From NCBI GenBank assembly GCA_051294905.1, contig CM119372.1:6758001-6822000 (forward strand): DNA of 64,000 nucleotides, in the 5' to 3' direction. Position numbers and translations under genes: made by a program. This document shows positions 115-20,200 of this stretch, piece by piece. Under the pieces are notes generated by a model. The model worked only from the letters and a program-made list of their open reading frames with translations, was not told the DNA's origin and ran no database searches. The stretch comes from Botryllus schlosseri (Eukaryota). Numbering within the stretch: the first letter of the stretch is position 1; each line of letters opens with the position of its first letter.

Positions 115-834
115 TTCCAGTTCTTTAGCAGATAAAGCTGAACAGTAGTGAGTCACATCAGGCGTGGAGCAGGTATTGGATTGCTCTCTGATCTGCCAAC
201 TGTCCATCACATCTGCAACGTCTTCAGTAGGCGTGTCTGTAGGACATACAACACGGGCCGTTACTCACGGGCTTTCATAAAATCATCTATCATAACCTAC
301 CTAATCCGTTCGGTACCATATCATCCAACATGTCGCCGTTGAAGTTACCGCAGAGACCGCAAAGGCTTCCTTGCCATTTCTCGGCGTTGGACACGTGGAT
401 ATAAAAAGAAGACTCTCCGTCCCAAGTGATGTCAAGGCCGAACAACTGCCCGTATAAGACAATGTAGTCGGTGTATGGGATCGTCTCAATATGCACGCCG
501 TTATAGAAACTTGGGATATTGATTCTTAAAGTGAAATTCGCGAGATAACACGGCTTCGACTGCTTGAGGTGAAAACGCAATATTTACTCTTCCTGGTTGA
601 ATGTCGCTTTTCCTTGACTGAGTTCGATCATCATGTCTATGTTCGATATTCTCAAAGTGGCCTTCCCTTCCTCATTGTAGATGAGGCTTATGGAAAACGA
701 GTCTGACTTGCAGTCTCGCACCACGTAGTAATGACAACGTCCGGTCGATGAGTAAAACACGCCATCGAAGGTGTGGTAATGTTCCCCTTTCCAGATAGCG
801 CAAGTGCTGCCTTTGAGTGGCTCGTATCCAATAA
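115..834 (-). CDS. Gene 1 von Willebrand factor type D (VWD) domain exons
   Basis: 588-834 [33 protein letters not shown]...; 301-524 ...[38 protein letters not shown] (VWD signature [10 protein letters not shown]); 115-236 ...[14 protein letters not shown]. The introns are 63 and 64 nt. Confidence 0.92.
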
Positions 835-3800
835 CTAAAACAAAATACAGCGTGACGGGAAGGTGCCTAACGGTTGGTGTGATTAGTGGACGCGGGTGCA
901 TCCAACTGCCATTTATAGCAAGCCCTCCTGCAAGACGTGTACACTGTACAGGTCAGTTCTAAAGTTAATTTTATAGAATGACGTTTTTATTTACTAGAGA
1001 GAACTTCCCATCTCTTCAGGATCAGACGCAATGAACGCAATACATGAATACCACAAGAATGAAATGCGTCTCCAGACGCAAGTAGTTAAGGTATTTTATG
1101 GTGTACGTTGCGCGACTTCGCGTCATCCGACGCACACTAGAACTATAGTTACACAATAATAGGCAAACAGCGCTGGCACTAAAGGTATGATGGATTGCAT
1201 TGGGCGGAAAAGTTATATTACTTAATTCAATAGATTATTGGCTTATACGTCGCCGCCCAGAATGCCAACAAATCACTTTTTACTGCCGCAGAAAACCAGG
1301 TCCGGATGTGGCGCAAGGTCCTTAATAGTTATGATGTTACGGTGAAAACTTTTATGTTTTGTGATGACCATTGAATCAGGTGTTGTTATGTCTGTTCATT
1401 GTATGATTACAAGTCAGATCTTTCAACAGTTTTGAAAATACATCTTCGGTGGGCGTCTGGGCAGTATAATTTGTGACCCGATTCGTATTTTATGAGGTTT
1501 ATGGAGACTGATATTTTTCACCCGCTTCTCCCCACCCATTATGTATATATTCGTCGGTCATAGAGTTCATTCATATTTCGTGTGTTTGTTATTCGACTAG
1601 TTTTCGCACTATTTACTATTTATTCCATTCTGCAATGATTAAGTAACTTACCTTCCGATTCGCCATCTCCTTCGCCCGTCGTTGGTACTTCTAAAATATA
1701 AATTTTAGAAATGATGAGGTTGCCAAGTTTAAGCTACTGGTATAACTGCAGATACCAAGTCTAGAATATTATCGTCATCTTCCATCACACCCGCAATAAT
1801 ATAAACCGGGATTCGAACGATACTATATTATTATATCTTACTACTCGCTGCCGTCATAGTAAACTGAATGCCTTTTTATAGAAATGATCGTCGAGGCTTG
1901 CCTTCCGCTCAAATCATTACTGTATACAACTGTACGTTCAAGTGTACATGCACGGTTAGCATAATATTGATGATAAATTAGAACATTACCTGCACCGCTC
2001 GATTCACCTATACATGAAAAAATTAGGAACACAAATTAGACACGCGATAGGAAAGTATTGCAGCGATAAACTGCACCTTCATCGCCTTTGACGATCTGAT
2101 CTTCTGCAATTTCGATCGCGCATGAAATGGAAAAACGCACCAATTACAGATGATCGCATGTGATAAAATTGGATAGCAAATCACAGCACACGAAAACGCA
2201 ATTCGGGCGCACGCGGACGAAGAAAATGTTTCGAAACAACCAAGATCAAGTCAGATTATAATTATAGATCAAATCGATACAGCATACAAATGTATCAGGT
2301 TATCTAATATATTTCAATAATACAACTTGTCCTTTTCAAGGTAATAATATTTCGGTGTCACCCCATTTCAACGCGAAAGTCATATTACCTTGACCACTAC
2401 CTTCGCTTCCGAACTGGCCTAAAATGGGAATATTGGATGATTTGATGAATGCATAATTATTAACAGTGCATGCTCATGAAATAATTACCTGCGGCGCTAC
2501 CTTCAATGCCAGGTAACAGCGCATCTGAATCCGACAAATAGATTAGAACACGGAATAAATAGGCAGGCAATGAAAATTATATTTGCACAATCAATGAACG
2601 CATAGAAATGAACCAGCGTAAAACAATCAAGTGATTGTAATTGTGGGTCCCGTGAAAGCGAGTTGAATTGAATAATGTCCCGTAACAAAATAATGACATG
2701 ACCTGACCACTCAGATTTATTTGATTATAGTCATCGAGTTATTACTCAAGCCATGGCCTACTTAGTAGGCCATGCTCAAGCATACATAAAATGCTTTAGA
2801 ACTTATGCGACCATCTCGATGAACTGTAGCTTTGGGATTCAAGTCAATGATCCGTGTCGCAGCGTAATATTATGGGTTTGATGTCGCTCGATTACATTAC
2901 ATTGCACAATGCACACGAGCAAGAGCATAACACGGTATATTTTAAGTGAGACTTCCCAAGTTCAACCGAGATATTATAGCTAGGAATTTGCGATTACGCA
3001 GAGTTTGTATCGATTCGAAAACGCGAAGATACTGTTTGCATAGATCGAACACGGGAGAAACACTGTACAATTGAAAAATACGATTAATCAAGAATTAAAG
3101 AGATTACCCTGTGCACTGCCTTCCACTTCGATTTGTGGCAGGCCTGTAAATTAATAAATATGATATGATTCTGAACACCAGGCCTCAAAATGGACAAATG
3201 TATGTACCCTGCGCTGCACTGCCTTCCAATACAATATCTGGCAAGCCTGGAAATGTTCAATTAGTAACACGAGAAATCGTGATAAGAATGAATGAGAAAT
3301 TGCAATGAATACCGTGCGCAGCGCTGCCTTCTATCAGGGATGCGTCTGCGATGAAAATTGATAAAATTCATGCATCAATAAATACAGAGTCTGTTAACGA
3401 GATTATTTTACCCTGTGCGCTGCCTTCCACTTCGATTTGTGGCAGGCCTGTAAATTAATAAACATGATATGATTTAGAACACCAGGTCTCAAAGTGGACA
3501 AATATATGTATGTACCCTGCGCTGCACTGCCTTCCATTTCAATATCTGGCAAGCCTGGAAATGTTCAATTAGTAACACATAAAATTGTGATAAGAATGAA
3601 TGAGAAATTGCAATGAATACCGTGCACAGCGCTGCCTTCTATCAGGGATACGTCTGTGATTGAAATTGATAAATTCATGCATCAATATATGCCGACTTAG
3701 TTAAGGAGATTGTTTTACCCTGAGCACTGCCCTCCAATTCTATTTCCGGCAAGCCTGTAATTGATAGTCTGGTCAGAATGTACGTCGTAAGACGTAGATA

Positions 3801-6800
3801 GATGATTTGACAAACTACTCGATACTACTGTAGGCCCTACTCATAAGGATTAAGTGTGAATGTGGACTGTAGATTTGCATCTGAATCAATGAGTAAGCCG
3901 GCGACTGTGCATAATCTAAGTTTCGTAATGGGCAAGGATCAATTCATATGGGATTCGGATTCAAAGCTTTCGGATTTGGATCTCAGAAGACTTGAACTGA
4001 GAGAAGGATGATATCGACTGTTTTTCGCTACTGTTCTCTCCACGTTAATAACACGATATTTACTGCATTGTTGCGTAACAATTGAGAAAATCGTCGTTCC
4101 CTTTACAGAGAGGAATTTGAATTGAGTGACCTAAGTGTGTATTCAGCACTATATACGCGCACCGATATGTATACTTTGAGATACGAAAATCAAATAAACA
4201 ATAGTTCTGACTTTCAGTAGATGTACAAATCAACCTCATAGCTTATATCAATTGAAGGAATTGATTATGATCATGAATATTCATGAATTACACAATGTCA
4301 TGTTTGGCATGCAAAAGGTTAACAGACGTAATACTGTACAGTGTACAAATACCGTACCGTGGGCGCTTCCTTCGAAAACTGGCAATCCTGGATGAATGAA
4401 AAATTACAAAAACTTATTGCAGTGATATGGCACGAGCATGCGCAACAGAAGATGTATCGGTAAACAAGTCCATGTTACGGTAAATGTTATTTTACTATTT
4501 AAGAGATTCTATAACAGATATACTAAGAAAGTATGTAACCATCTTTGTAGTTGATCGAACAAAATTGATTATGAGAATCGGCAAGGATTTTAGATGTATT
4601 TTGGAGCATATCAGCGTTTAATTCTCGTCGCTTAGATTCTGAAGTTTTGAATCGAAGAGTGCGAAAACGAAGTTTAATATTGTCGATCATTAATAAATAT
4701 GCATATATATCGAAAATACATTATATCCAAATTAGAGCAAGCCAGAATATTTTTTCGATCGCAAAAAGCCAACTCACAGACTACCCGTATAAATATTTAA
4801 ATTATTCACCTTGGGAGCCGATTCCAGCTTCCACGTGGCCTGGAATATTACATAGATGACTAATTAGCAAAGTGGATTACTAAATCCGGAAAGAAAGCGT
4901 GTAAAATTAGGAATTGGCAATCAAATCGATGACAAAAACAGATGTTGAACACGAATTTTAAGAATTACAAATCGCATGCAGGACATATAGGAAAACGCGC
5001 ACTGATTTTCATGAAACTTAGTGACAAACTGGCTTATCACGATTCAAAAATGTACGAGTACACTCAGTGAACTGTTACTTCCACCTGCTCCGCGAACATT
5101 AAACCGTATCGTATGTCACTACAAGACGTCTAAAATAACTATAGTATTCACCAGTGGAACTGCCCTCAATATCGGCGAACTCAGCTCCACCGCTACCATC
5201 CAAACGCGATAAACCTACAATTTTGAGGCGATATTGTGTGTTTCCTACCATATCAAGGTCTATTTACACTGATGAGGAATCAAAACGCACGGGCGAATCA
5301 CCATTAATAATACAGAATATAATACAACAATTTAGTGTGAGGTATGAAGCTGTAATGTGGTGCATATCAATAGGTAATCTCGATCCACACGCACGTTTGA
5401 TACAATATCAATGTAAACACTCCCTTGTGGAAAGATTGATATTTACCAGTCCCGCTACCCTCTGAAATCGCTGCCTCTGCGCTTCCCTCTACAGCCAAAA
5501 CTCCTATTTGTACAATTAAACACTAACATCAAATTCATAATCTTCAACCTAGAATTCACAATATTATTACCAGCACCGCTGCTTTCTAGTACAATCCCTG
5601 AAAATTAATGTGATAGATTGAATGAGGAGCTCGTGGTCGAATTTAAAACGATGAAATTACCTTCGCCGAGGCCCTCTTTTGTATGGCCTGACTTATGAAC
5701 TGAAAGAAAGCCAACGTGAAATATTACGAAAATCATGCAAAATGTGATGAAAAATTATACCTGCAACAATCATGCCAGGCAACGGATACGCTGAAAGCAA
5801 CCAGGATGACGAATTAATAACGCGAAGCAGTGAAATCGGGACAATGGCAAGCACGATAGGTCTATAAATCTTGATGATAGGAAAATATATCTTGGTAAAA
5901 ACCCGCATGTTTGTCCGTGTAAGCTAAACTTTGCAGACCTTGACTGATCTTATTACAGTAATCTATAGTTGCGCAAAATATACCTACTCAACCTAACTTA
6001 ACACACTCCACGGCTGCCGCGGAGCCAATCAAGATCAACGCGATCCTGTCGGGGTATAGTCAAGAGCCATGCAATCACTCACCGGTACAGGTTTTCCTAA
6101 CTCCTTGGTAAATGGTCGTGGTGGAACACCAATACTCCCCATCGATAGATCCATCTTTGGTGCAGTCTTCGTACATTTTCCCGTTGAATTCGAACGGGAA
6201 AACGCATTCTTCAGGCAAAGCTGAACACCGCCGTAAATCTTAGCAATCATTGATTCCTACATGCCTACTACAAAGTCTCACGTATTTCGCACAATTCCCC
6301 CCTGTATCCGTCAGGGCAGGAGCATACGTCCGGAGCGGTGCAAGTGCCGTTGTGTTGACATCCATCGCCGCAAGTAGCTTCATATATGACAGGCATCGTT
6401 AAGTAAGATTGTGACAGGCTAATTAGCGATCATTCACTTACGAGTTTCGCAAATTTCTCCGCCGTATCCAGCAGGACACTTGCATTTGTTCGGACTGGCG
6501 CAAGTACCGCCGTTGAGACATGGCTTGCGGCAAACAGCTGTAAATAGCGATAGCTACCATTACATCTATCTTTGAGGAATGAATTTTACTTTGCTTGTTA
6601 CGGACTTTACGCGGAATCACTACCTATCATATAGAGTTAACAGCTTATAGCTCTCAGGGAATGATGAGAACATGCAATAATGCACAAGTCATGACACGTT
6701 CTATTGACATACGTCCATAAAATTATCCGGTATCGTCCTGTGTAGAATTGTCCAGCTTGGAAAGGTAGCTGCTATTTGAATTCACCGACACCACCGATGA

Positions 6801-7866
6801 ATGGCGTCAGTTTTCACGGCTTAACTTTCTATTCTGAATATTTTGTTGCCATGCTGAAATAGTTTCGTATGCATATCTTGTCATCAAATCTTTGTTTTAC
6901 CTTTAAACTTCGAATCGAGGACGTTTGTATTATAATATAGAATACATAGCTAGTTCTACATCACAACATTGATAATTTCGTATTTTTCACCGTGCCCACT
7001 GCCCAGTTTAGTGCTCGCGGTTTCAAGAATTACACATTGTTAAATAGAGTCGAAATTATAATTCTTGTTGATAAATGGACGTTTAAAAACGGCAATGAGC
7101 GTATAATCTCATTACTCGACTAGACTCATAATAATTAATACTCCATTCAGATTCGAGTACACGAATCGTTGTGCTCAGCCCTAGTTACGACACAGGAGTA
7201 GGTTGGTTGAAATCAAATTTGTGCCTTATGCACCTGACACGCCAGTATTTGACAATGTACCTTACTCAACACCTAGACCACAGTTTCGACATACCTTCTT
7301 CGCACGCATCACCTTTCCAGCCTTCAGAACAACTGCAGGTGTCGGGACCCGTGCATACGCCGTTCACGCACTCGTTGGTACAATGAACTAAGCAAAATAT
7401 TTCATATCAAATAATGATTGGTATTATCTACATTAGGTATCTCACATGCATCGCAGGCAGCACCAGTCCATCCTTCTTCGCAGTTGCACTTGTTCACGTC
7501 GACACACACGCCGTGCTCGGAACAGGCCGGGTTGCACGTTATCGTCTGGGTTTGCGTCTGACTTTGCGTCTGGTGCTGGACTTGATCAGGGACATGCTGC
7601 ATAGAGTCTGGTAGATCCGGGATTTTTCTGAAATAATGAGAGGCGACTTAGTGGATTTCATCTTGTGGGCAGAGAACATATCGCTTACATTACGTTCCGC
7701 TTCGTTCTTTTCGTCTTTTTTAAAGCAGCTTTACACGAAAAGGAATATATAGGTTATAGTCAAGCGTGTCTGTATATCATTAGTCGGATCGGATCTCAGG
7801 ATACTTACAAGTGGAATGGAGTATGGAGATTGCCAAAATGGCAGTAAAAATTAAAGAAAACTTCAT
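115..7866 (-). CDS. Multi-exon secreted ECM/proteoglycan-like protein: signal peptide, furin-like site, 4 EGF, FN2, Gly/Ser/Glu micro-exon array, VWD (3' end probably outside window)
   Basis: Exons (transcription order): 7809-7866, 7689-7728, 7446-7627, 7295-7387, 6442-6537, 6282-6377, 6083-6220, 17 micro-exons 5699->1652, 588-834, 301-524, 115-236. All are GT-AG, and they sum to 1917 nt = 639 codons with no stop. Confidence 0.85.
1652..5699 (-). CDS. Gene 1 array of 17 symmetric (phase 1-1, 3n) micro-exons encoding an acidic Gly/Ser repeat region
   Basis: Exons 5661-5699, 5571-5597, 5447-5503, 5152-5214, 4810-4839, 4358-4387, 3719-3754, 3621-3653, 3516-3554, 3412-3447, 3313-3345, 3208-3246, 3108-3143, 2489-2524, 2389-2418, 1990-2007, 1652-1690 (18-63 nt each). 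Each is flanked by a pyrimidine tract + AG and by G|GT. Example peptides: [33 protein letters not shown]. Confidence 0.85.
3095..3760. repeat. Tandem duplication of a ~305-bp three-exon unit (2 full copies plus a partial third)
   Basis: 3108-3411 and 3412-3718 repeat exon sizes 36/39/33 nt, and the introns align closely by eye. 3719-3754 is an additional 36-nt copy. Confidence 0.9.
6083..6220 (-). CDS. Gene 1 fibronectin type II (FN2) domain exon
   Basis: [45 protein letters not shown] matches the FN2 pattern C.FPF.(Y/F).G..Y..CT..G......WC.TT..Y......C. It is a 138-nt phase 1-1 exon with donor GTGAGT. Confidence 0.92.
6282..6537 (-). CDS. Gene 1 EGF-like domains 3 and 4 (two 96-nt phase 1-1 exons)
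   Basis: 6442-6537 [31 protein letters not shown]; 6282-6377 [31 protein letters not shown]. Splice sites are canonical. The ORF track misses them. Confidence 0.92.
7295..7627 (-). CDS. Gene 1 EGF-like domains 1 and 2, preceded by a Q/T-rich stretch
   Basis: 7446-7627 ...[42 protein letters not shown]; 7295-7387 [30 protein letters not shown]. Both have six-Cys EGF spacing. Confidence 0.92.
7689..7866 (-). CDS. Gene 1 exons 1-2: signal peptide and basic propeptide
   Basis: 7809-7866 encodes [19 protein letters not shown] (donor GTAAGT). 7689-7728 encodes [13 protein letters not shown], and RTKR fits the R-X-K-R furin consensus. The phases (1, then 2) join in frame to exon 7446-7627. Confidence 0.8.
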
Positions 7867-13123: not shown

Positions 13124-14077
13124 CCATATGTGATATGTGTCGTTGTTCTTACGGCGACAGAAAAGCCCCCCCCCAAAAAAAAAACAATAAAGAAAGAAAA
13201 AAAGCAAGAAATAGCTTCTAAAAAGGACCGACGAAGAAAGAATAACATCGAGGAAGACATCGGGAATTAGGTCGAGGTATATGCCAATTCAAGAGACTCC
13301 AACTGGTTGGTCGTTGGGCGCCCCCTTATCTGTTAATTACATCTCATTGTGTGTCTTTGTGTCTTGTTTATCGCATTGTACATTGTGTGTATGTCTTTGT
13401 CAGATTATAGAATGTAAACATTTACATTCTATAGTCAGATGATAATATAATCTGACGATTGATTGATGTAAACAGGAAATTTAAGGACGACCACCTCGTA
13501 TCACAAAAGCGCAGCTATCTAGCGCTGACGTGCTGCCTAGATCGACGGGAGCTCACGACTCATTGTGTTTGTATTGCACCTTCGGAACACTAAATAGAAT
13601 AGTGGAAGTCGAAATCCGTGAAGCACCTCGCTTCCAAATGAGAACATCGCTATGAATTCGTATTTGGCAAGCAGGCTTATACTGCGGACTCGTGTCAAAC
13701 TCTTTCCTTGATAATTTGAAGTGCACCACATCATCACCGATTCTTTGACGACTCGTATCGTATCAACGTGTCCTTGTCAAATTGAGGACAATCGACGTTT
13801 CGCGTTCGTCATGTATATCAGAGACTCTGCCTCCAATTACCGAAGAAAGAAGAAATATTCTATCCCGCCAGTAGGCCACACGAGTAGCGTCACGCGGTAA
13901 TGTAATCAGGCTGTATCATCACATGCGATTAACATTGGAATCCTGATGACAACTCGTGACCGAGCGTTTGCTGATATTAAATCTCCTATGAAGTCATACA
14001 CAGTATTCGATTGCGATGCTGGATAGATTAAAATAAACGGCCGATTCCCGTGGGATTGTGAACATACCACAGCGTTC

Positions 14078-14087
14078 CCATATAAAG
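14078..14087 (+). promoter_or_regulatory. TATA-like / CArG-like motif upstream of the muscle Ig/Fn3 gene
   Basis: CCATATAAAG contains TATAAAG and is one mismatch from CC(A/T)6GG. It lies ~200 nt before the first ATG. Support is positional only. Confidence 0.3.
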
Positions 14088-14288
14088 TAATGGTCGCGTC
14101 TCCCGTCTTCTGGATGCGAGGAGATCACATTTACTGACGTTAACTATGATAGAAATTTAGGAATTTCCGGAGCTATAATCTGCTATTATCGTGATATTAT
14201 GAAAAAGTTTTCATCGCTAAACTTTAGATATAGGCCTACTCCACTGTAGCAGGTGAATAACGAGTGCTGGGATTGAGCTGTGCCAGCC

Positions 14289-17200
14289 ATGTCGGATATC
14301 ACTGTGTCAAAAGGTGGTAAAGCTACGTTTTCGTGTGAGCTTCCTGATTCGTCCTATACCGGCAGTTGGAATCAAGTATGTAGTGTGTTTGCCAGTGATA
14401 AGTGCTTATAAATGTATGGAATGTGCATGCATAATATCTTTATATACATCGGTCTAGAACAGTGGCTCTCAACCATAGGGGTCCGCGAAACCTCCAAATT
14501 TGCAAAATGGTTGATACATGTTTTTTTCAATTAGAGAAATCACGAGACAGTTTCGTTAAAACTTCATAACTCACATAAACAGAATGGCAGTCTGAGATGA
14601 AATATTCTACTGTGCAAAGTCATTTTAATTGACAAATTGCCGATAGCCTATTGCTGTTATGAGATGTTTCAGTGGGGTTAGTGAAAAGATTGTTTGCATA
14701 AATCCATTTTCTCCTGTGATGTGCATAACCGCTACTTCAGAATAACTTCAACATGAGCTGCTACATAGAAATGACTATGCGGGACGGTATATGTTCAATA
14801 AAAATCGGTTTCTCAATTTTGGTGTCACTTATGTTGCGATCATATTCAAGTCAAAGGTGTCGTTAGAAGCGATGCGCGTTAAAATTGCATTCGCCACCCC
14901 CTATCGTTGCGGAAACGGATTTAGTTACAGAATTCAATTTGAAATAATAGAAATCTTCCCAGTTTCTACATAAATAGTAGGCTATTATGTTATTTTCAAT
15001 AATGGTCAATTTGTTCCTGTTTATCACTAGTCTACGGTTGATATTTGCACACGGCAGATGACGGCTGCACGATAATAGAACTACATTTAAACTAAAACTT
15101 TGGGGGTTCGCGCGGGTCCGCGGAGACAAAAGGTTAAGAACCACTGGTAGAGAAGATAACTAGATGGCTTCAAGGTCAAGAAAACAGATAAAACCGACAT
15201 GGACAATTAGACAGTTACATTCGTACGAAATTGTGACTGTAAAAATAACAATATCTTTGCATCCGTCAAGAATAGCTTTTATATAGCTAATCGAAACCAT
15301 GCGTTTTTGCTGAAGAAACACGCGAATAAACCAGCGTGAAAGTTTGACTGATCAATGAAACCACTTATTTCATCTAAAATAATGAAAATTCAGATTTTGA
15401 CCGACTAATGACTTTCAATCAGCCAATTTTATTTCTAGTTTATATTATTTATAGTTGAGTGCTACAGTATTGGTGCTCCTCACTTCGGGCATGAAATTTT
15501 CCTAGTAATAATTCACCCATCAATAAACCCACTACTTCTTTTTGCCCGTCATCATATTTTTATTATTGGTTCAATCATCGTAGTCATTGTTTTATTGAGC
15601 GCGGCCCAGGCTCATGTACTAGGCTGGTCATTTCATCATATCGGCCATGTCTCAATGAACGGTTTTAACATGATAACGGTAGCGAAATGCGTTATAATCA
15701 CTCACTAGAATTTTCAGAAAAAGAGGTGTGTGTGTAATTGTGTAATGTGTATTGTGCATGCGCAGTGCATAAAGGGTAACCCGACAGCAATAATGACACC
15801 CATTTCTCTCTCACGCAGACAAAGCATGCACACATGCGCAAACGTTAAATATGTGACATGCGTGACATCGTAATTAGGGATAAAAGTTCACTTGTATTCG
15901 TCGAATTGCCAAATTTTCGACTTGGTCATTGCTAGATAATTTTTAGTCCCAATGTCACAACTCACCACAACCGAGACGTAACGTCAAGTCCTCATCCCAA
16001 TCGACTCTTCTACCTATAAAGGTATATTCAGGGGTTCTTAAACTTTTTTGATCGCGGACCCATCATCATCATTTATTAATTTTTTATCAAATCAATACAC
16101 CACACCACAAGATTGCGATATAATGAAAAGATAGGAGGGTGCCGAAACGATTTGGAGAAGACCTACTCTTTTAATCGGACACCGATCTTGGCCTATAGCA
16201 TGTAAATAAGAGGCATGCACACTAGATTTAAGAAACCATAACATAAAAGGAAGCGACAAAATGAATGCTACATGTCTAGGTAGGCGAGGTCGATATGTCA
16301 GATTGTGGTCCCGTAATCCTGAGGTCTTCAAGTTTGGTGGGCGGTTGCGCGTATCCCCATAGTTTCAGAAGCCGATGACCAAAATAAATTGACATGAAGC
16401 TCGACTGTATTTAGGCTATTACATACCTAAAAAAAGATATTTACTGACTAGACAAGCTAGTCACAGTACCCCTCATGGTGTCATTGGCAAAGGATAATAA
16501 TCTTTGTAGTTTCTTGATGATGCAGTTCAACATTGCCCTTTCACGGACTCCCTAAAACTAGTTCACAGATCCCTAAGGCGTCCGTAGATCCCAGTTTAAA
16601 AAACCCTGTATTTATTATATTGTTGAATGCGTATTCTGCAACAGAATGGAAAACAGCTGGTCGACGATGGATCCAGGATTATAATATCGCACACTGGTTC
16701 GAAGCATTCCCTCGTTATCACTAAAACGGAAGTAACGGATGCCGGAGAGATTTCCTTCGTAACGACGAAAGGCGGAGTTAATGTTCCGTTCAAACTCATT
16801 GTAACCGGTACGGAAATTGTTGACAATCCGTGGTCTAATCAGACATGCATTGAAACTAGGAGTCTTCTCGGGTTCAGACTCGACTTTGGGAAATCATTCA
16901 AACTGCAATAGGTTCTGATACCCACTCGGAAAACATACAATGTAAATTTGCGCTGCATGGTTTAAGGTTTGTTAGGTTCTAGAGGCGCGAAATTGGTCCT
17001 CTCATCTCAGTTTAGAGTTTTCGATTCACGTATTGCGATGTACGGATTGAAAGTCGCTTTGCCAGAGGCCTATACATGGAATACGAAAGGCCCTGGCAGA
17101 AACGATATTAGAAATAATCAATATATTTCAACAAATAACCATGATTGTGGTGCTTTGATTTTGACCTGGCCTAATCTCAACAAACGGTCGTTTTCCCAAA

Positions 17201-20200
17201 TACGGCGTTTCGTCGGCGACAGTTATTTGGTCATCAATTGCGGCAATCTTGGCGCCGAATAAGTGACGGGCAATTCGCTCGCGGTAAATGGCCGGAAGTT
17301 TTCTTGGGTGTTTAATGCCTTCTCCTATCTATATTGTGATGTCTTTTAGAGCCACCAGCGATCGATCCCGTTGAATTCGAGAAATGCGCAAAAGCATTGG
17401 GGGAGTTGAAGACCGGCGGTGATTTGGTTCTGAAAGTTCCATTTAACGGGGCGGCACCTATATCAGCGCAATGGAGCTTCAACGGCAATGCAATAAAGTC
17501 ATCGAGTCGTTGTAAAATTGTAACTACTGCAACCAGCAGCACGCTTTCCATGAGTGGATTTTCCGCAGAAGATTGCGGTACCTACGAGGTAGGTAAAACG
17601 CACTGCACTAGCCAAGATCAATTGACTGTGGGGGTATCCATGGTCAGCGTTTTACGGAATATGCAACACGTTGTGGCAATTACGTAATAAGATTTTAGGA
17701 ACTGATTTGATTCACAGTCAGAAAGCTCTAAAACGGTCTGTCGTGTCCTAGAGCCGATGCGAGAGAGCGATTGGTAGTTTTTAAATGGATGACTTACATG
17801 CATCATAAAAATAAACTTAGATGCTCTGCACTATCTTTAAATAGAGGTCGACCGATATTGATTTTTGCAGGCCGATACAGATTATCGACACGCTCACAAG
17901 GCCGATAACCGATATCATAGGCTGATATTAATATGGAAGGAGCAGATAACCATTTCGTTAAATATATTATATATTAGGCAAGATGGCACTTGTGCATGCC
18001 ACAGAAAGCTGAACAACACACGAGAAAACTGAAATTAAAAAGAATTATTGCTAAATTGCGCACATTCATTGAAATTGAATTGAAATTGGAATTTCGCACA
18101 TGTTTCAATATATAAAAAGTGATATCTTCTTATTGAAGCCAGATTGTTGTGGTGACCCATTTTCGAAGGCTCTAAGACCCAAGATTTGGTCGCGATGCAG
18201 GGGTTCAGAGCAACTGGGATATAGAATACAACGCCACAGCCATGTTCGAGTGGCCTATAATATATCGCTGAACTATAGCGCTGACTGAAGGCATATGCAA
18301 TGCACTATAGAGAAGTCTGGGCTACTGGTGTTGCTCTGCTTTCGGCCTTAGACAGTCAATCATTGGTCAAATCATGATGGCTCTAAAACGTTCTTTTATT
18401 CCAGGTAAAGTTGAGTAACAAATTCGGAGAAACCCAAGCACCTATTGAAGTCTCATTGTCTGATGTGTCAGAAGTGAATTTCGAAACAATAGAGGTACCC
18501 GGGGAAACAATAAAGAAATCCCAAACTATGACCATCAACGAAGAACAAGGTATGACACCCAATACATAGCTATAGGAACTTGAACCGACTTAAAGTTCTT
18601 TCGACGTACATTAATTAAAGTAGCCAAAGGCTTACCACGATTGGTGATTGGTGAACAAATTCCTTGACCCTCCGAATGTAATACACGATGTTAGTTTGGA
18701 GTGAATAAGGGAGAAAATCATAAGGAAGTGCTGCCTCCTTGGGGACAGGAATATTCGGGCTCAGGACATCACAAATATCGAAGGTGTCGGTCAGCAGCAT
18801 GCGGAGTTCGTTTTCGGCCAAATCTTTTGCATGGCCGGTCTGTTATGTCTTTGCACCATTCGCGACTCCTTTTGCGGCGTCTCATGTTGTCCTAAACCTA
18901 ACAGGTTTTTGTATGGCTTGCCATCAATTAGCTCTGTGCCCCTCTCACATCGTGCAACACCAACACCAGATATAAAGTCCCAGCAAAATGTATTCTTCAT
19001 TCAGTCGAAATTGTTGAAGCTCCCGCAAAACCAGGCGGAAACATCAAGTTCGATAATATGTCCGCTAACAAATTCACCATTGGCCTAACGGTAGCAGCGC
19101 CACCGGGAACAACTCATTACGTCGTCGAAAAATGCGAGTCTGGAAAATCCAATTGGGATGAGGCACGTTTGACCACATTATTTTCACATAAATATTATAA
19201 GTGATTAAAGTCTATGTCATCGCAGATAGGACAGTTCGACGCGTCGCTGAAGGCTTTCCAGCTCCCCGAACTACCCGTAGGGAAGAGATGCACCTTCCGC
19301 ATTCGAGCGGCCAATAAATTCGGACTTAGTGATGCTCTCGAGTCGCGAGCCGTAAGCGTGCAACCGCCATCGAATCCCCCAGAGATTGATGCCGCAATAG
19401 TTGAGCAGCTGAAGCAAGAGCAGATTCCAAAAGCTGGGAAGGATTACAAACTGAAAGTAATGGCACATCTGCGAATCGTTGATTACAAAATATTGATTTC
19501 AAATTATGCGACAAATTCTAGATCCCGTACGTCGGTCATCCCTTACCACTGGCTAGTTGGACCAAAGACGGGAAGAAGCTCGCAACAAAAGGCAAGGTAT
19601 CGTCGGAAACTGGAGAGAAAGTGGTGTCCTTCACAGTTGCTGGTGTTGGCGCCGAAGATTCCGGAGAATATGGACTGACACTGAAGAATAAAGCTGGCAG
19701 CGCACAATTAAATTTCAAGTTAACAGTGATTGGTTAGTAGCGTATTGGAATGTAAAACAGTTCGTAGTTGGTCATACGGAATATAAAAAATAACGCAAGC
19801 AATCATCGCATTACAGACACTGCGCCAATAGCATTGTTCTATTTCATCTGAATTAAACGCGCAAGTGTTCATAACGCGATTGGCCAACGACAAAGCTAGG
19901 ATAGAAAATTGTTGACCGGGAAGCGCGATACGAGTCCAGACTGTACGAATAGTACACGTACTCTCTACTCTTTCCATCGCTCGCTATGATGCCATAGAAA
20001 CATATATAGATTACATATACATATACATATATAAACAATGCCGCGTTCTTAAAATTTATCAGCACCAGATGGCCAAACTCATGGTCATCTAAGCACTGGG
20101 AGCCCGGTGGTTTGAAAATGAATACGTCAAAGACGTTGTGTGACAGAATGCGTATATATTTCACCAATAGACCAGTCTAGAGGTCGGAAATTCGCAGTGA

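What the first reader, a model, noticed from the sequence alone, without database searches (positions are those of the whole stretch)
1652..5699. Array of 17 frame-preserving micro-exons encoding E/D-G-S-(A/G) motifs: putative splice-tunable proteoglycan module
Seen: 17 exons of 18-63 nt, all multiples of 3, all phase 1-1, lying between the FN2 and VWD exons and invisible to the ORF track. Together they encode 207 aa with 14 (E/D)GS motifs (mostly EGSA, also EGSG, DGSG, EGSS) and 6 Ser-Gly dipeptides. Established: xylosyltransferases prime GAG chains on Ser in acidic G-S-G-type contexts, and a G-S-A site is GAG-modified in chicken collagen IX alpha2. Symmetric micro-exon arrays are best known from schistosome MEG genes. 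Inference: roughly one exon encodes one potential GAG site, so any subset can be skipped in frame, giving a combinatorial dial on glycosylation and spacer length of a secreted matrix protein. I know of no described chordate gene built this way, but could not search.
Basis: partly seen in the sequence, partly recalled or inferred. Interest (0 to 1): 0.88.

Follow-up and report, generated by a model that had tools for sequence, protein, structure and literature searches.

The report
Optional micro-exon array, acidic Ser-Gly linker
Nineteen tiny in-frame exons in a secreted matrix-protein gene are really spliced into mRNA, and eighteen of them are skipped together in roughly half to two thirds of transcripts, swapping a 13-residue linker for a 226-residue acidic one that may carry sugar chains; elastin and chicken Muc13 are already known to be built this way.

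Summary
On the minus strand, between an FN2 exon (6220-6083) and a VWD exon (834-588), lie 19 exons of 18-63 nt. All are multiples of 3, phase 1-1, with AG/GT sites. One more lies at 5790-5761. Together they encode 226 residues with 14 (E/D)GS(A/G/S) motifs and 6 Ser-Gly.

Assembled RNA contigs from two samples show GT..AG junctions for almost the whole chain. They also show a direct FN2-to-1690 junction that removes 18 exons at once. Inclusion is about 0.33 and 0.45 in the two samples. So the exons are real and alternative splicing is real, but it was seen only as an all-or-none block, not exon by exon.

A 308-bp three-exon unit is tandemly duplicated.

The E-G-S-A core fits what human xylosyltransferase 1 accepts. 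However, nearly all proven GAG sites have Gly after the Ser, so proteoglycan status stays an inference.

The architecture is not unprecedented in chordates. Tropoelastin is entirely phase 1:1 with 60-100-nt introns, and chicken and zebrafish Muc13 have one exon per glycosylated repeat. I rate this a new variant of a known kind, of moderate interest. Unchecked scan notes list other micro-exon arrays in this genome.

The parts
6083..6220 (-). FN2 exon, phase 1-1. Its donor (GTGAGT) pairs either with acceptor 5790 or with acceptor 1690.
   Evidence: Pfam PF00040 E=2e-15; joints 5790->6083 and 1690->6083
5761..5790 (-).
   Evidence: model; joints 5790->6083 and 5699->5761 in X1 and X2
5661..5699 (-). 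Micro-exon 2 (39 nt), carries K-S-G-H
5571..5597 (-). Micro-exon 3 (27 nt), carries E-S-S-G-A
5447..5503 (-). Micro-exon 4 (57 nt), carries EGSA and EGSG
5152..5214 (-). Micro-exon 5 (63 nt), carries DGSG and EGSS. The variant at 5174 is synonymous.
4810..4839 (-). Micro-exon 6 (30 nt), carries I-G-S-Q
4358..4387 (-). Micro-exon 7 (30 nt), carries EGSA
3719..3754 (-). Micro-exon 8 (36 nt), carries EGSA; older partial copy of the repeat unit
3621..3653 (-). Micro-exon 9 (33 nt), carries EGSA
3516..3554 (-). Micro-exon 10 (39 nt), carries EGSA
   Evidence: loose ends at 3620 and 3515
3412..3447 (-). Micro-exon 11 (36 nt), carries EGSA
   Evidence: loose end at 3515. The junction to 3345 was not among the joints displayed.
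3313..3345 (-). Micro-exon 12 (33 nt), carries EGSA
   Evidence: loose ends at 3312 and 3247
3208..3246 (-). Micro-exon 13 (39 nt), carries EGSA
   Evidence: joint 3142->3207
3108..3143 (-). Micro-exon 14 (36 nt), carries EGSA
   Evidence: The junction to 2524 was not among the joints displayed.
2489..2524 (-). Micro-exon 15 (36 nt), carries EGSA
   Evidence: Canonical sites; its junctions were not among the joints displayed (4 joints were not shown).
2389..2418 (-). Micro-exon 16 (30 nt), carries EGSG
   Evidence: joint 2103->2389
2077..2103 (-).
   Evidence: joints 2103->2389 and 1692->2074
1990..2007 (-). Micro-exon 18 (18 nt), carries E-S-S-G-A
   Evidence: 13 of its letters stand between the two sides of joint 1692->2074 (table 5c)
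1652..1690 (-). Micro-exon 19 (39 nt), acidic; present in both isoforms
   Evidence: joints 834->1652, 1690->6083 and 1692->2074
588..834 (-). First VWD exon; the domain continues in the exon starting at 524 (about 302-524)
   Evidence: Pfam PF00094; joints 524->588 and 834->1652
3104..3760 (.). Tandem duplication: a 308-bp unit of three micro-exons plus three 64-68-nt introns, 2.2 copies
   Evidence: TRF 89% matches; families D1-D3; the two full copies are about 94-97% identical in exons and 87-94% in introns
1691..6082 (-). The 4392-nt stretch removed as one intron in the short isoform; it holds micro-exons 1-18
   Evidence: joint 1690->6083 with CT..AC ends, depth 8.0 (X1) and 29.3 (X2)

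Best explanation
This is an optional linker module of a secreted multidomain matrix protein: signal peptide, RTKR site, four EGF domains, FN2, the linker, then VWD and at least 3.5 kb more mRNA. The linker is encoded by 19 phase 1-1 micro-exons that grew by tandem duplication of one- to three-exon units. The FN2 donor splices either to the nearest micro-exon, so that all 19 are chained through mostly 61-70-nt introns, or directly to the last micro-exon. The protein therefore carries either a 226-residue linker or a 13-residue one. The long linker is low-complexity and strongly acidic (41 D/E against 4 K/R). It repeats a unit of the form G-L-P-x-I-E-h-E-G-S-A-(A)-Q. The E-G-S-A/G core is kept even in the old, diverged copies. 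I read this core as most likely a xylosyltransferase acceptor site, so the long isoform would be a part-time proteoglycan, or at least O-xylosylated, and the short isoform would not. Shown here: the exons, frame, junctions, two isoforms and duplication. Inferred: secretion, disorder and glycanation. Sub-confidences: exons real 0.97; block-level alternative splicing 0.85; Ser modification by xylose or GAG about 0.4.
For: One open frame runs through 19 canonical AG/GT exons. The motif-bearing exons are confined to this region and strand, with 0 elsewhere and 0.04 in shuffles. GT..AG joints for nearly every junction appear in two RNA samples, plus the direct joint 1690->6083. In X2 the depths of the two branches (29.3 + 14.1-14.4) add up to about the flanking depth (37-49), as expected for two isoforms of one gene. 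Inclusion is about 0.33 and 0.45. The skip keeps the frame. The tandem duplication is shown. Both exonic variants seen in the RNA contigs are synonymous, while about 23 variants lie in introns. In 13 motif contexts, G is at -1 in all 13, E/D at -2 in all 13, A or G at +1 in all 13, P at -7 in 5 and E at -4 in 4. XT1 requires G or A at +1, works equally well with either, and prefers acidic residues upstream (PMC5992326). CS sites are SG or SA in disordered acidic regions, and P at -7/-6 with D/E at -4/-3 are enriched in highly sulfated sites (PMC10424144).
Against: There is no biochemical evidence of any modification. Ten of 14 motifs have Ala at +1. PMC5992326 notes that all but one known GAG site has Gly there and suggests a later step may need Gly. 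The C. elegans motif is E/D-G/A-S-G, and motif-based prediction is called ambiguous (PMC8418075). The RNA evidence comes from assembled contigs of two samples of one study. The tool marks the skip joint as 'between: not known'; I infer it is direct from the roughly 30-nt sides and the additive depths. Two raw-read RNA runs gave almost no reads. Conservation of the array in other species could not be tested.
Confidence: 0.55

Rival explanations
1. One reading: each micro-exon is an independently skippable cassette, so splicing sets the number of GAG chains and the spacer length combinatorially.
For: Every exon is phase 1-1, so any subset is frame-compatible. About ten exons carry exactly one motif each. 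Alternative splicing does occur at this locus. Contigs break inside the duplicated part, so skipping of a repeat unit there would be invisible.
Against: Among the displayed joints, only consecutive junctions and the single 18-exon skip appear. In X2 one contig depth (14.4) runs from FN2 through seven micro-exon junctions, and in X1 one depth (6.51) runs through the first five, with no branching. Phase symmetry is general for extracellular modules and does not by itself imply regulated skipping (PMC3632108).
Confidence: 0.12
2. The array is an unmodified polyanionic, disordered spacer. It would act as an entropic or electrostatic bristle, or a low-affinity cation binder, that sets the distance between the EGF/FN2 head and the VWD assemblies. 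On this reading the G-S-A motif is a by-product of the duplicated unit.
For: Composition is G 19%, E 14%, S 12%, A 11%, with net charge about -37. The duplicates are too recent to show selection on the motif by themselves. Ala at +1 is rare in proven GAG sites (PMC5992326).
Against: The E-G-S-A/G core persists in old copies whose flanks have diverged, for example the motifs in exons 5503-5447, 4387-4358 and 2524-2489. That is what a modification or recognition site would look like. The context matches xylosyltransferase preferences (PMC5992326, PMC10424144).
Confidence: 0.3
3. The micro-exons are prediction artefacts or splicing noise, and the true mRNA joins FN2 to the VWD region.
For: The skip form is the more abundant branch in both samples.
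Against: The included branch has a third to nearly half of the depth in two samples, with canonical junctions along the whole chain. The frame stays open through 678 nt. Both exonic variants are synonymous.
Confidence: 0.03

Closest known systems
Tropoelastin (ELN) gene architecture
   Same: [quoted passage not shown] Exons are small and repetitive and encode a low-complexity matrix segment. Replicated regions have introns of only 60-100 nt. Cassette-like alternative splicing keeps the frame (PMC12554196). Here all 19 exons are phase 1-1, 11 of the 18 introns within the array are 61-70 nt, and junction codons are mostly Gly.
   Different: There is no sequence relation. This linker is acidic and Ser/Ala-containing, not hydrophobic PG-rich with Lys cross-linking exons. 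It is one module inside an EGF-FN2-VWD protein. Splicing was seen only as an all-or-none block.
Chicken and zebrafish Muc13 PTS domain (one exon per glycosylated repeat)
   Same: A glycosylation-type repeat domain of a chordate protein is split so that each exon encodes one repeat unit. Those authors already proposed that splicing could set domain length within an individual (PMC1552070).
   Different: Muc13 repeats are Pro/Thr/Ser mucin-type. Here S+T is 14% and P 4%, and the motif is of xylosyltransferase type. Here spliced RNA shows an actual alternative event.
Versican V0-V3 (and other alternatively spliced GAG-bearing domains)
   Same: Alternative splicing includes or removes whole GAG-attachment regions and so changes the number of chains per core protein (PMC4859157, Fig. 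4 legend).
   Different: Versican uses two giant exons (GAG-alpha and GAG-beta), not micro-exons. No lectican domains are seen in the window. GAG attachment is proven there and only inferred here.
Schistosome micro-exon genes (MEGs)
   Same: Runs of symmetric micro-exons in secreted proteins, with exon skipping generating variants (from established knowledge; not re-read here).
   Different: In MEGs the micro-exons make up most of a small secreted protein. Here the array is an internal linker of a large multidomain protein, the exons are 18-63 nt, and no exon-by-exon variation was seen.
General rule: symmetric exons, disorder, tandem duplication
   Same: Genes of disordered proteins tend to be built from symmetric exons that arise by internal tandem duplication, and alternatively spliced symmetric exons encode the most disordered regions (PMC3632108).
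   Different: That is a statistical rule for human genes. This is a particularly dense case, with 19 exons in 4.1 kb.

Membership tests
Symmetric tandem mini/micro-exon array encoding a repetitive matrix segment (elastin / Muc13 type of gene architecture) | All exons are multiples of 3 and share one phase | tested here: met
   19 of 19 are phase 1-1, 18-63 nt
Symmetric tandem mini/micro-exon array encoding a repetitive matrix segment (elastin / Muc13 type of gene architecture) | Exons related by internal tandem duplication | tested here: met
   308-bp three-exon unit in 2.2 copies; the same peptide unit recurs in older copies
Symmetric tandem mini/micro-exon array encoding a repetitive matrix segment (elastin / Muc13 type of gene architecture) | Exons are spliced into mRNA as predicted | tested here: met
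   GT..AG joints or loose ends for 16 of 19 junctions within and bordering the array, in RNA contigs of two samples
Symmetric tandem mini/micro-exon array encoding a repetitive matrix segment (elastin / Muc13 type of gene architecture) | Cassette-like skipping of individual exons | tested here: inconclusive
   Only an 18-exon block skip was seen. Contigs cannot exclude rare or repeat-internal events.
Proteoglycan core protein (GAG attachment domain) | Acceptor Ser followed by Gly or Ala | tested here: met
   13 of 14 motifs: 10 Ala and 3 Gly; EGSS fails. Rule from PMC5992326.
Proteoglycan core protein (GAG attachment domain) | Acidic residues at -2 to -4 in a disordered, low-complexity region of a secreted protein | tested here: met
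   E/D at -2 in 13 of 13, E at -4 in 4 of 13, net charge about -37, signal-peptide-like N-terminus. Disorder is inferred from composition only.
Proteoglycan core protein (GAG attachment domain) | Match to the strict experimentally derived invertebrate motif E/D-G/A-S-G | tested here: not met
   Only 3 of 14 motifs (EGSG twice, DGSG once) match; the rest have Ala or Ser at +1 (motif from PMC8418075)
Proteoglycan core protein (GAG attachment domain) | Xyl-Gal-Gal-GlcA linkage and a GAG chain demonstrated on the Ser | not testable with these tools
   Needs glycoproteomics or lyase digestion
Schistosome-type micro-exon gene (MEG) | Most of the coding sequence of a small secreted protein consists of micro-exons | tested here: not met
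   The array is an internal module between FN2 and VWD. One contig carries at least 3.5 kb more mRNA downstream.
Gel-forming mucin PTS domain | Pro/Thr/Ser-rich repeat region | tested here: not met
   S 12%, T 2%, P 4%; G, E and A dominate. A VWD domain is present downstream.
Lectican (aggrecan/versican) | Link-module G1 domain and C-type lectin G3 domain flanking the GAG region | tested here: not met
   The flanks here are EGF x4 + FN2 and VWD. The part of the gene beyond the window start could not be read.

The most novel reading that the evidence does not exclude
The long isoform is a true proteoglycan whose chains sit one per micro-exon, and exon choice, together with copy-number changes of the 308-bp unit between individuals, sets how many chains a VWD-type polymer-forming protein carries. 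That would be an exon-quantised, independently evolved counterpart of the lectican CS domain.
Probability: 0.12. Interest if true: 0.75.

Novelty: new variant of a known kind. Interest (0 to 1): 0.45.

Why it matters
If the Ser sites are glycanated, this gene would give a direct way to study how glycan load on a matrix protein is set at the RNA level. It has an on/off switch between a bare 13-residue linker and a 226-residue arm with up to 13 acceptor sites, and the arm is built from units that can be duplicated or lost one exon at a time. It would also add many Ser-Ala sites to a list of proven GAG sites that is dominated by Ser-Gly. That bears on the open question raised in PMC5992326 of why Ala-compatible xylosyltransferase sites are so rarely seen as GAG sites. 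If the sites are not glycanated, this remains a clean, RNA-supported example of micro-exon arrays that ORF-based annotation misses.

Tried and rejected
1. Cross-species conservation could not be tested. HMMER with the VWD exon against 1.84 billion representatives gave FCGBP-like multi-VWD proteins and one 90-aa ortholog fragment, P0004, at 79% identity. Its two contigs are 566 and 624 bp, hold only the VWD exon, and share its phase-1 acceptor. The word-indexed search returned only P0004 again.

2. The spliced 226-residue peptide has no single reference in the window, so I did not send it to the database, family or structure tools.

3. Raw-read RNA runs gave 2 reads (X19) and 0 reads (X23), so there are no read-level junction counts.

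4. I looked for long-range inverted repeats that might loop out the array. Only two short pairs of 16-17 nt were found, and neither bridges the FN2 intron and the 1690 acceptor.

5. I looked for the same kind of motif-bearing exon elsewhere in the window and found none.

6. I looked for a published description of micro-exon genes in amphioxus or Ciona and found none. I did not establish the organism. That the scan's notes cover 19 sequence pieces is only a hint.

7. I did not see the sequence.
Full report
WHAT IS THERE

The gene lies on the minus strand. Reading splice sites by hand and checking the frame by script gives this order:
- a signal-peptide exon (7866-7809)
- a 40-nt exon encoding R-T-K-R (7728-7689)
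- four EGF exons (7627-7446, 7387-7295, 6537-6442, 6377-6282)
- an FN2 exon (6220-6083)
- 19 micro-exons
- a VWD domain split over 834-588 and the next exon, which starts at 524

Pfam confirms FN2 (E=2e-15), VWD (9e-13 and 3e-11) and EGF.

The 19 micro-exons are 18-63 nt long. All are multiples of three and all are phase 1-1, with AG acceptors and GT donors. Eleven of the 18 introns within the array are only 61-70 nt. The exons have 56% G+C against 39% for the region.

Another exon (5790-5761) lies just outside the range.

The conceptual peptide is 226 residues. It has 41 acidic and 4 basic residues.

IS IT MORE THAN CHANCE

A mechanical scan looked for AG-[open phase-1 exon of 18-63 nt encoding the motif]-GT. 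It returns 37 overlapping candidates. All are on the minus strand between 1600 and 5800. None occurs elsewhere in the 64 kb on either strand, and shuffles of the region average 0.04.

ARE THE EXONS USED

I laid two assembled RNA data sets (X1 and X2, two samples of one study) and two raw-read RNA runs on 500-6300. The raw-read runs gave 2 and 0 reads and say nothing.

The contigs show joints with CT..AC ends, which is GT..AG on the gene's strand, at the predicted positions. In gene order these are:
- FN2->5790, 5761->5699, 5661->5597, 5571->5503, 5447->5214
- 5152->4839, 4810->4387, 4358->3754, 3719->3653
- 3208->3143, 2389->2103
- 2077->(18-nt exon 2007-1990, whose letters stand between the two sides)->1690
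- 1652->834, and 588->524

Loose ends cover 3621->3554, 3516->3447 and 3313->3246. Three junctions (3412->3345, 3108->2524, 2489->2418) were not among the joints displayed; four joints were not shown.

Low-depth contigs also cover several introns. These reflect unspliced RNA or DNA in the libraries.

ALTERNATIVE SPLICING

Both samples also hold a joint from the FN2 donor (6083) directly to the acceptor of the last micro-exon (1690). It skips 4392 nt and 18 micro-exons.
- Depths are 29.3 (skip) against 14.1-14.4 (inclusion) in X2, and 8.0 against 6.5 in X1. Inclusion is therefore about 0.33 and 0.45.
- The tool marks this joint 'between: not known'. I take it as direct for two reasons. Its shorter side is 29 nt, which is what a k=31 assembly graph gives for a junction-specific branch. 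And in X2 the two branch depths sum to about the depth of the flanking contigs (37.2 upstream, 48.6 downstream).
- The skip keeps the frame, leaving 13 residues between FN2 and VWD.

Because it coexists with the full chain, it instead shows a two-state switch.

I saw no exon-by-exon skipping. In X2 one contig depth runs through seven consecutive micro-exon junctions, and in X1 through five. Contigs drop rare variants and break in the duplicated part, so this is weak evidence against the combinatorial model, not a refutation.

HOW THE ARRAY AROSE

Tandem Repeats Finder reports a 308-bp unit in 2.2 copies at 3104-3760 (families D1-D3). Each unit holds three micro-exons (33, 39 and 36 nt) and three introns of 64-68 nt.
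- The two full copies are 94-97% identical in exons and 87-94% in introns. That is too recent to show differential constraint.
- Four of the five exonic differences change flanking residues (V/A, E/V, M/L), the fifth is synonymous, and none changes the E-G-S-A core.
- Older copies elsewhere in the array keep the same core while their flanks have diverged.
- The only two exonic variants in the RNA contigs (5174 and 782) are synonymous, while about 23 variants fall in introns. This suggests purifying selection, but the covered lengths are not known exactly.

WHAT THE PEPTIDE LOOKS LIKE TO THE GAG MACHINERY

I tabulated the 13 motif contexts that have A or G after the Ser.
- G is at -1 in all 13 and E/D at -2 in all 13.
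- +1 is Ala in 10 and Gly in 3.
- Pro is at -7 in 5 and Glu at -4 in 4.

The structural study of human XT1 shows that a constriction forces Gly or Ala at +1, that the enzyme works equally well with either, and that acidic residues upstream are favoured (PMC5992326). Site-specific glycoproteomics describes SG or SA sites in disordered acidic regions. It finds D/E at -4/-3 and Pro at -7/-6 enriched at highly sulfated sites (PMC10424144). So the motif is a credible acceptor.

Three points argue against it:
- PMC5992326 points out that all but one known GAG site has Gly at +1, and suggests a later step may require it.
- The C. elegans motif is E/D-G/A-S-G.
- The authors who report that motif warn that motifs alone cannot identify proteoglycans (PMC8418075).

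The composition is not mucin-like: S+T 14% and P 4%. I put glycanation at about 0.4.

COMPARISON WITH WHAT IS KNOWN

Two exist.
- Tropoelastin has phase 1:1 borders throughout, introns of 60-100 nt in its replicated regions, and cassette-like alternative splicing (PMC12554196).
- Chicken and zebrafish Muc13 have a PTS domain in which each exon encodes one repeat. Those authors proposed that splicing could set the length of the glycosylated domain within an individual (PMC1552070).

More generally, genes for disordered proteins tend to be built from symmetric exons that arise by tandem duplication, and alternatively spliced symmetric exons encode the most disordered parts (PMC3632108). Switching GAG-bearing regions by splicing is classical in versican V0-V3 (PMC4859157).

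What is new here is the combination. A xylosyltransferase-type motif is quantised one per micro-exon, inside an EGF-FN2-VWD protein, with RNA evidence for an on/off block. I therefore class it as a new variant of a known kind.

Unchecked notes of this scan list other micro-exon arrays in the same genome, which suggests the architecture is common there.

LIMITS

- The organism was not identified.
- The part of the gene beyond the window start could not be read. One contig carries at least 3.5 kb more mRNA downstream.
- The array could not be compared across species.
- The spliced peptide could not be sent to the database or structure tools, because it has no single reference.

VERDICT

The exons and the alternative splicing are real. 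The splicing seen is a block switch, not a dial. Proteoglycan status is plausible but unproven, and the architectural novelty was overstated. Interest: 0.45.

Noticed in passing
window 6073, 5739, 4980, 4313, 3681, 3374, 1952 (minus strand): TGCATG, the Rbfox-type element, occurs 7 times in the 5.2 kb between FN2 and VWD against 2.8 expected from window density (Poisson p about 0.02). One copy lies 10 nt after the FN2 donor, and two lie in the duplicated introns. RBFOX and PTBP1 regulate micro-exons in human brain (PMC4317164, title only). This is a lead, not a finding.
   Followed up: partly
window 7689-7728 (minus strand): A 40-nt exon right after the signal-peptide exon encodes K-R-T-K-R, a furin-type site, which would leave only a very short propeptide. 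I did not check it against RNA, because it lies outside the stretch I laid.
   Followed up: no
window 1719 (intron): A 14-nt deletion relative to the window in one RNA-library contig of X1, and about 23 single-base differences in introns in X1 and X2. These point to ordinary polymorphism and to unspliced RNA or DNA in these libraries.
   Followed up: no
L001 1-624 and L002 1-566: Two short contigs from ENA metagenome assemblies carry the VWD exon of a related species (79% identical protein, same phase-1 acceptor). So DNA of a relative of this animal is present in those metagenome samples.
   Followed up: partly
window 14000-20000 (+ strand): ORFs here look like Ig and FN3 modules of a large muscle- or adhesion-type protein on the opposite strand. 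They are unrelated to the finding.
   Followed up: no
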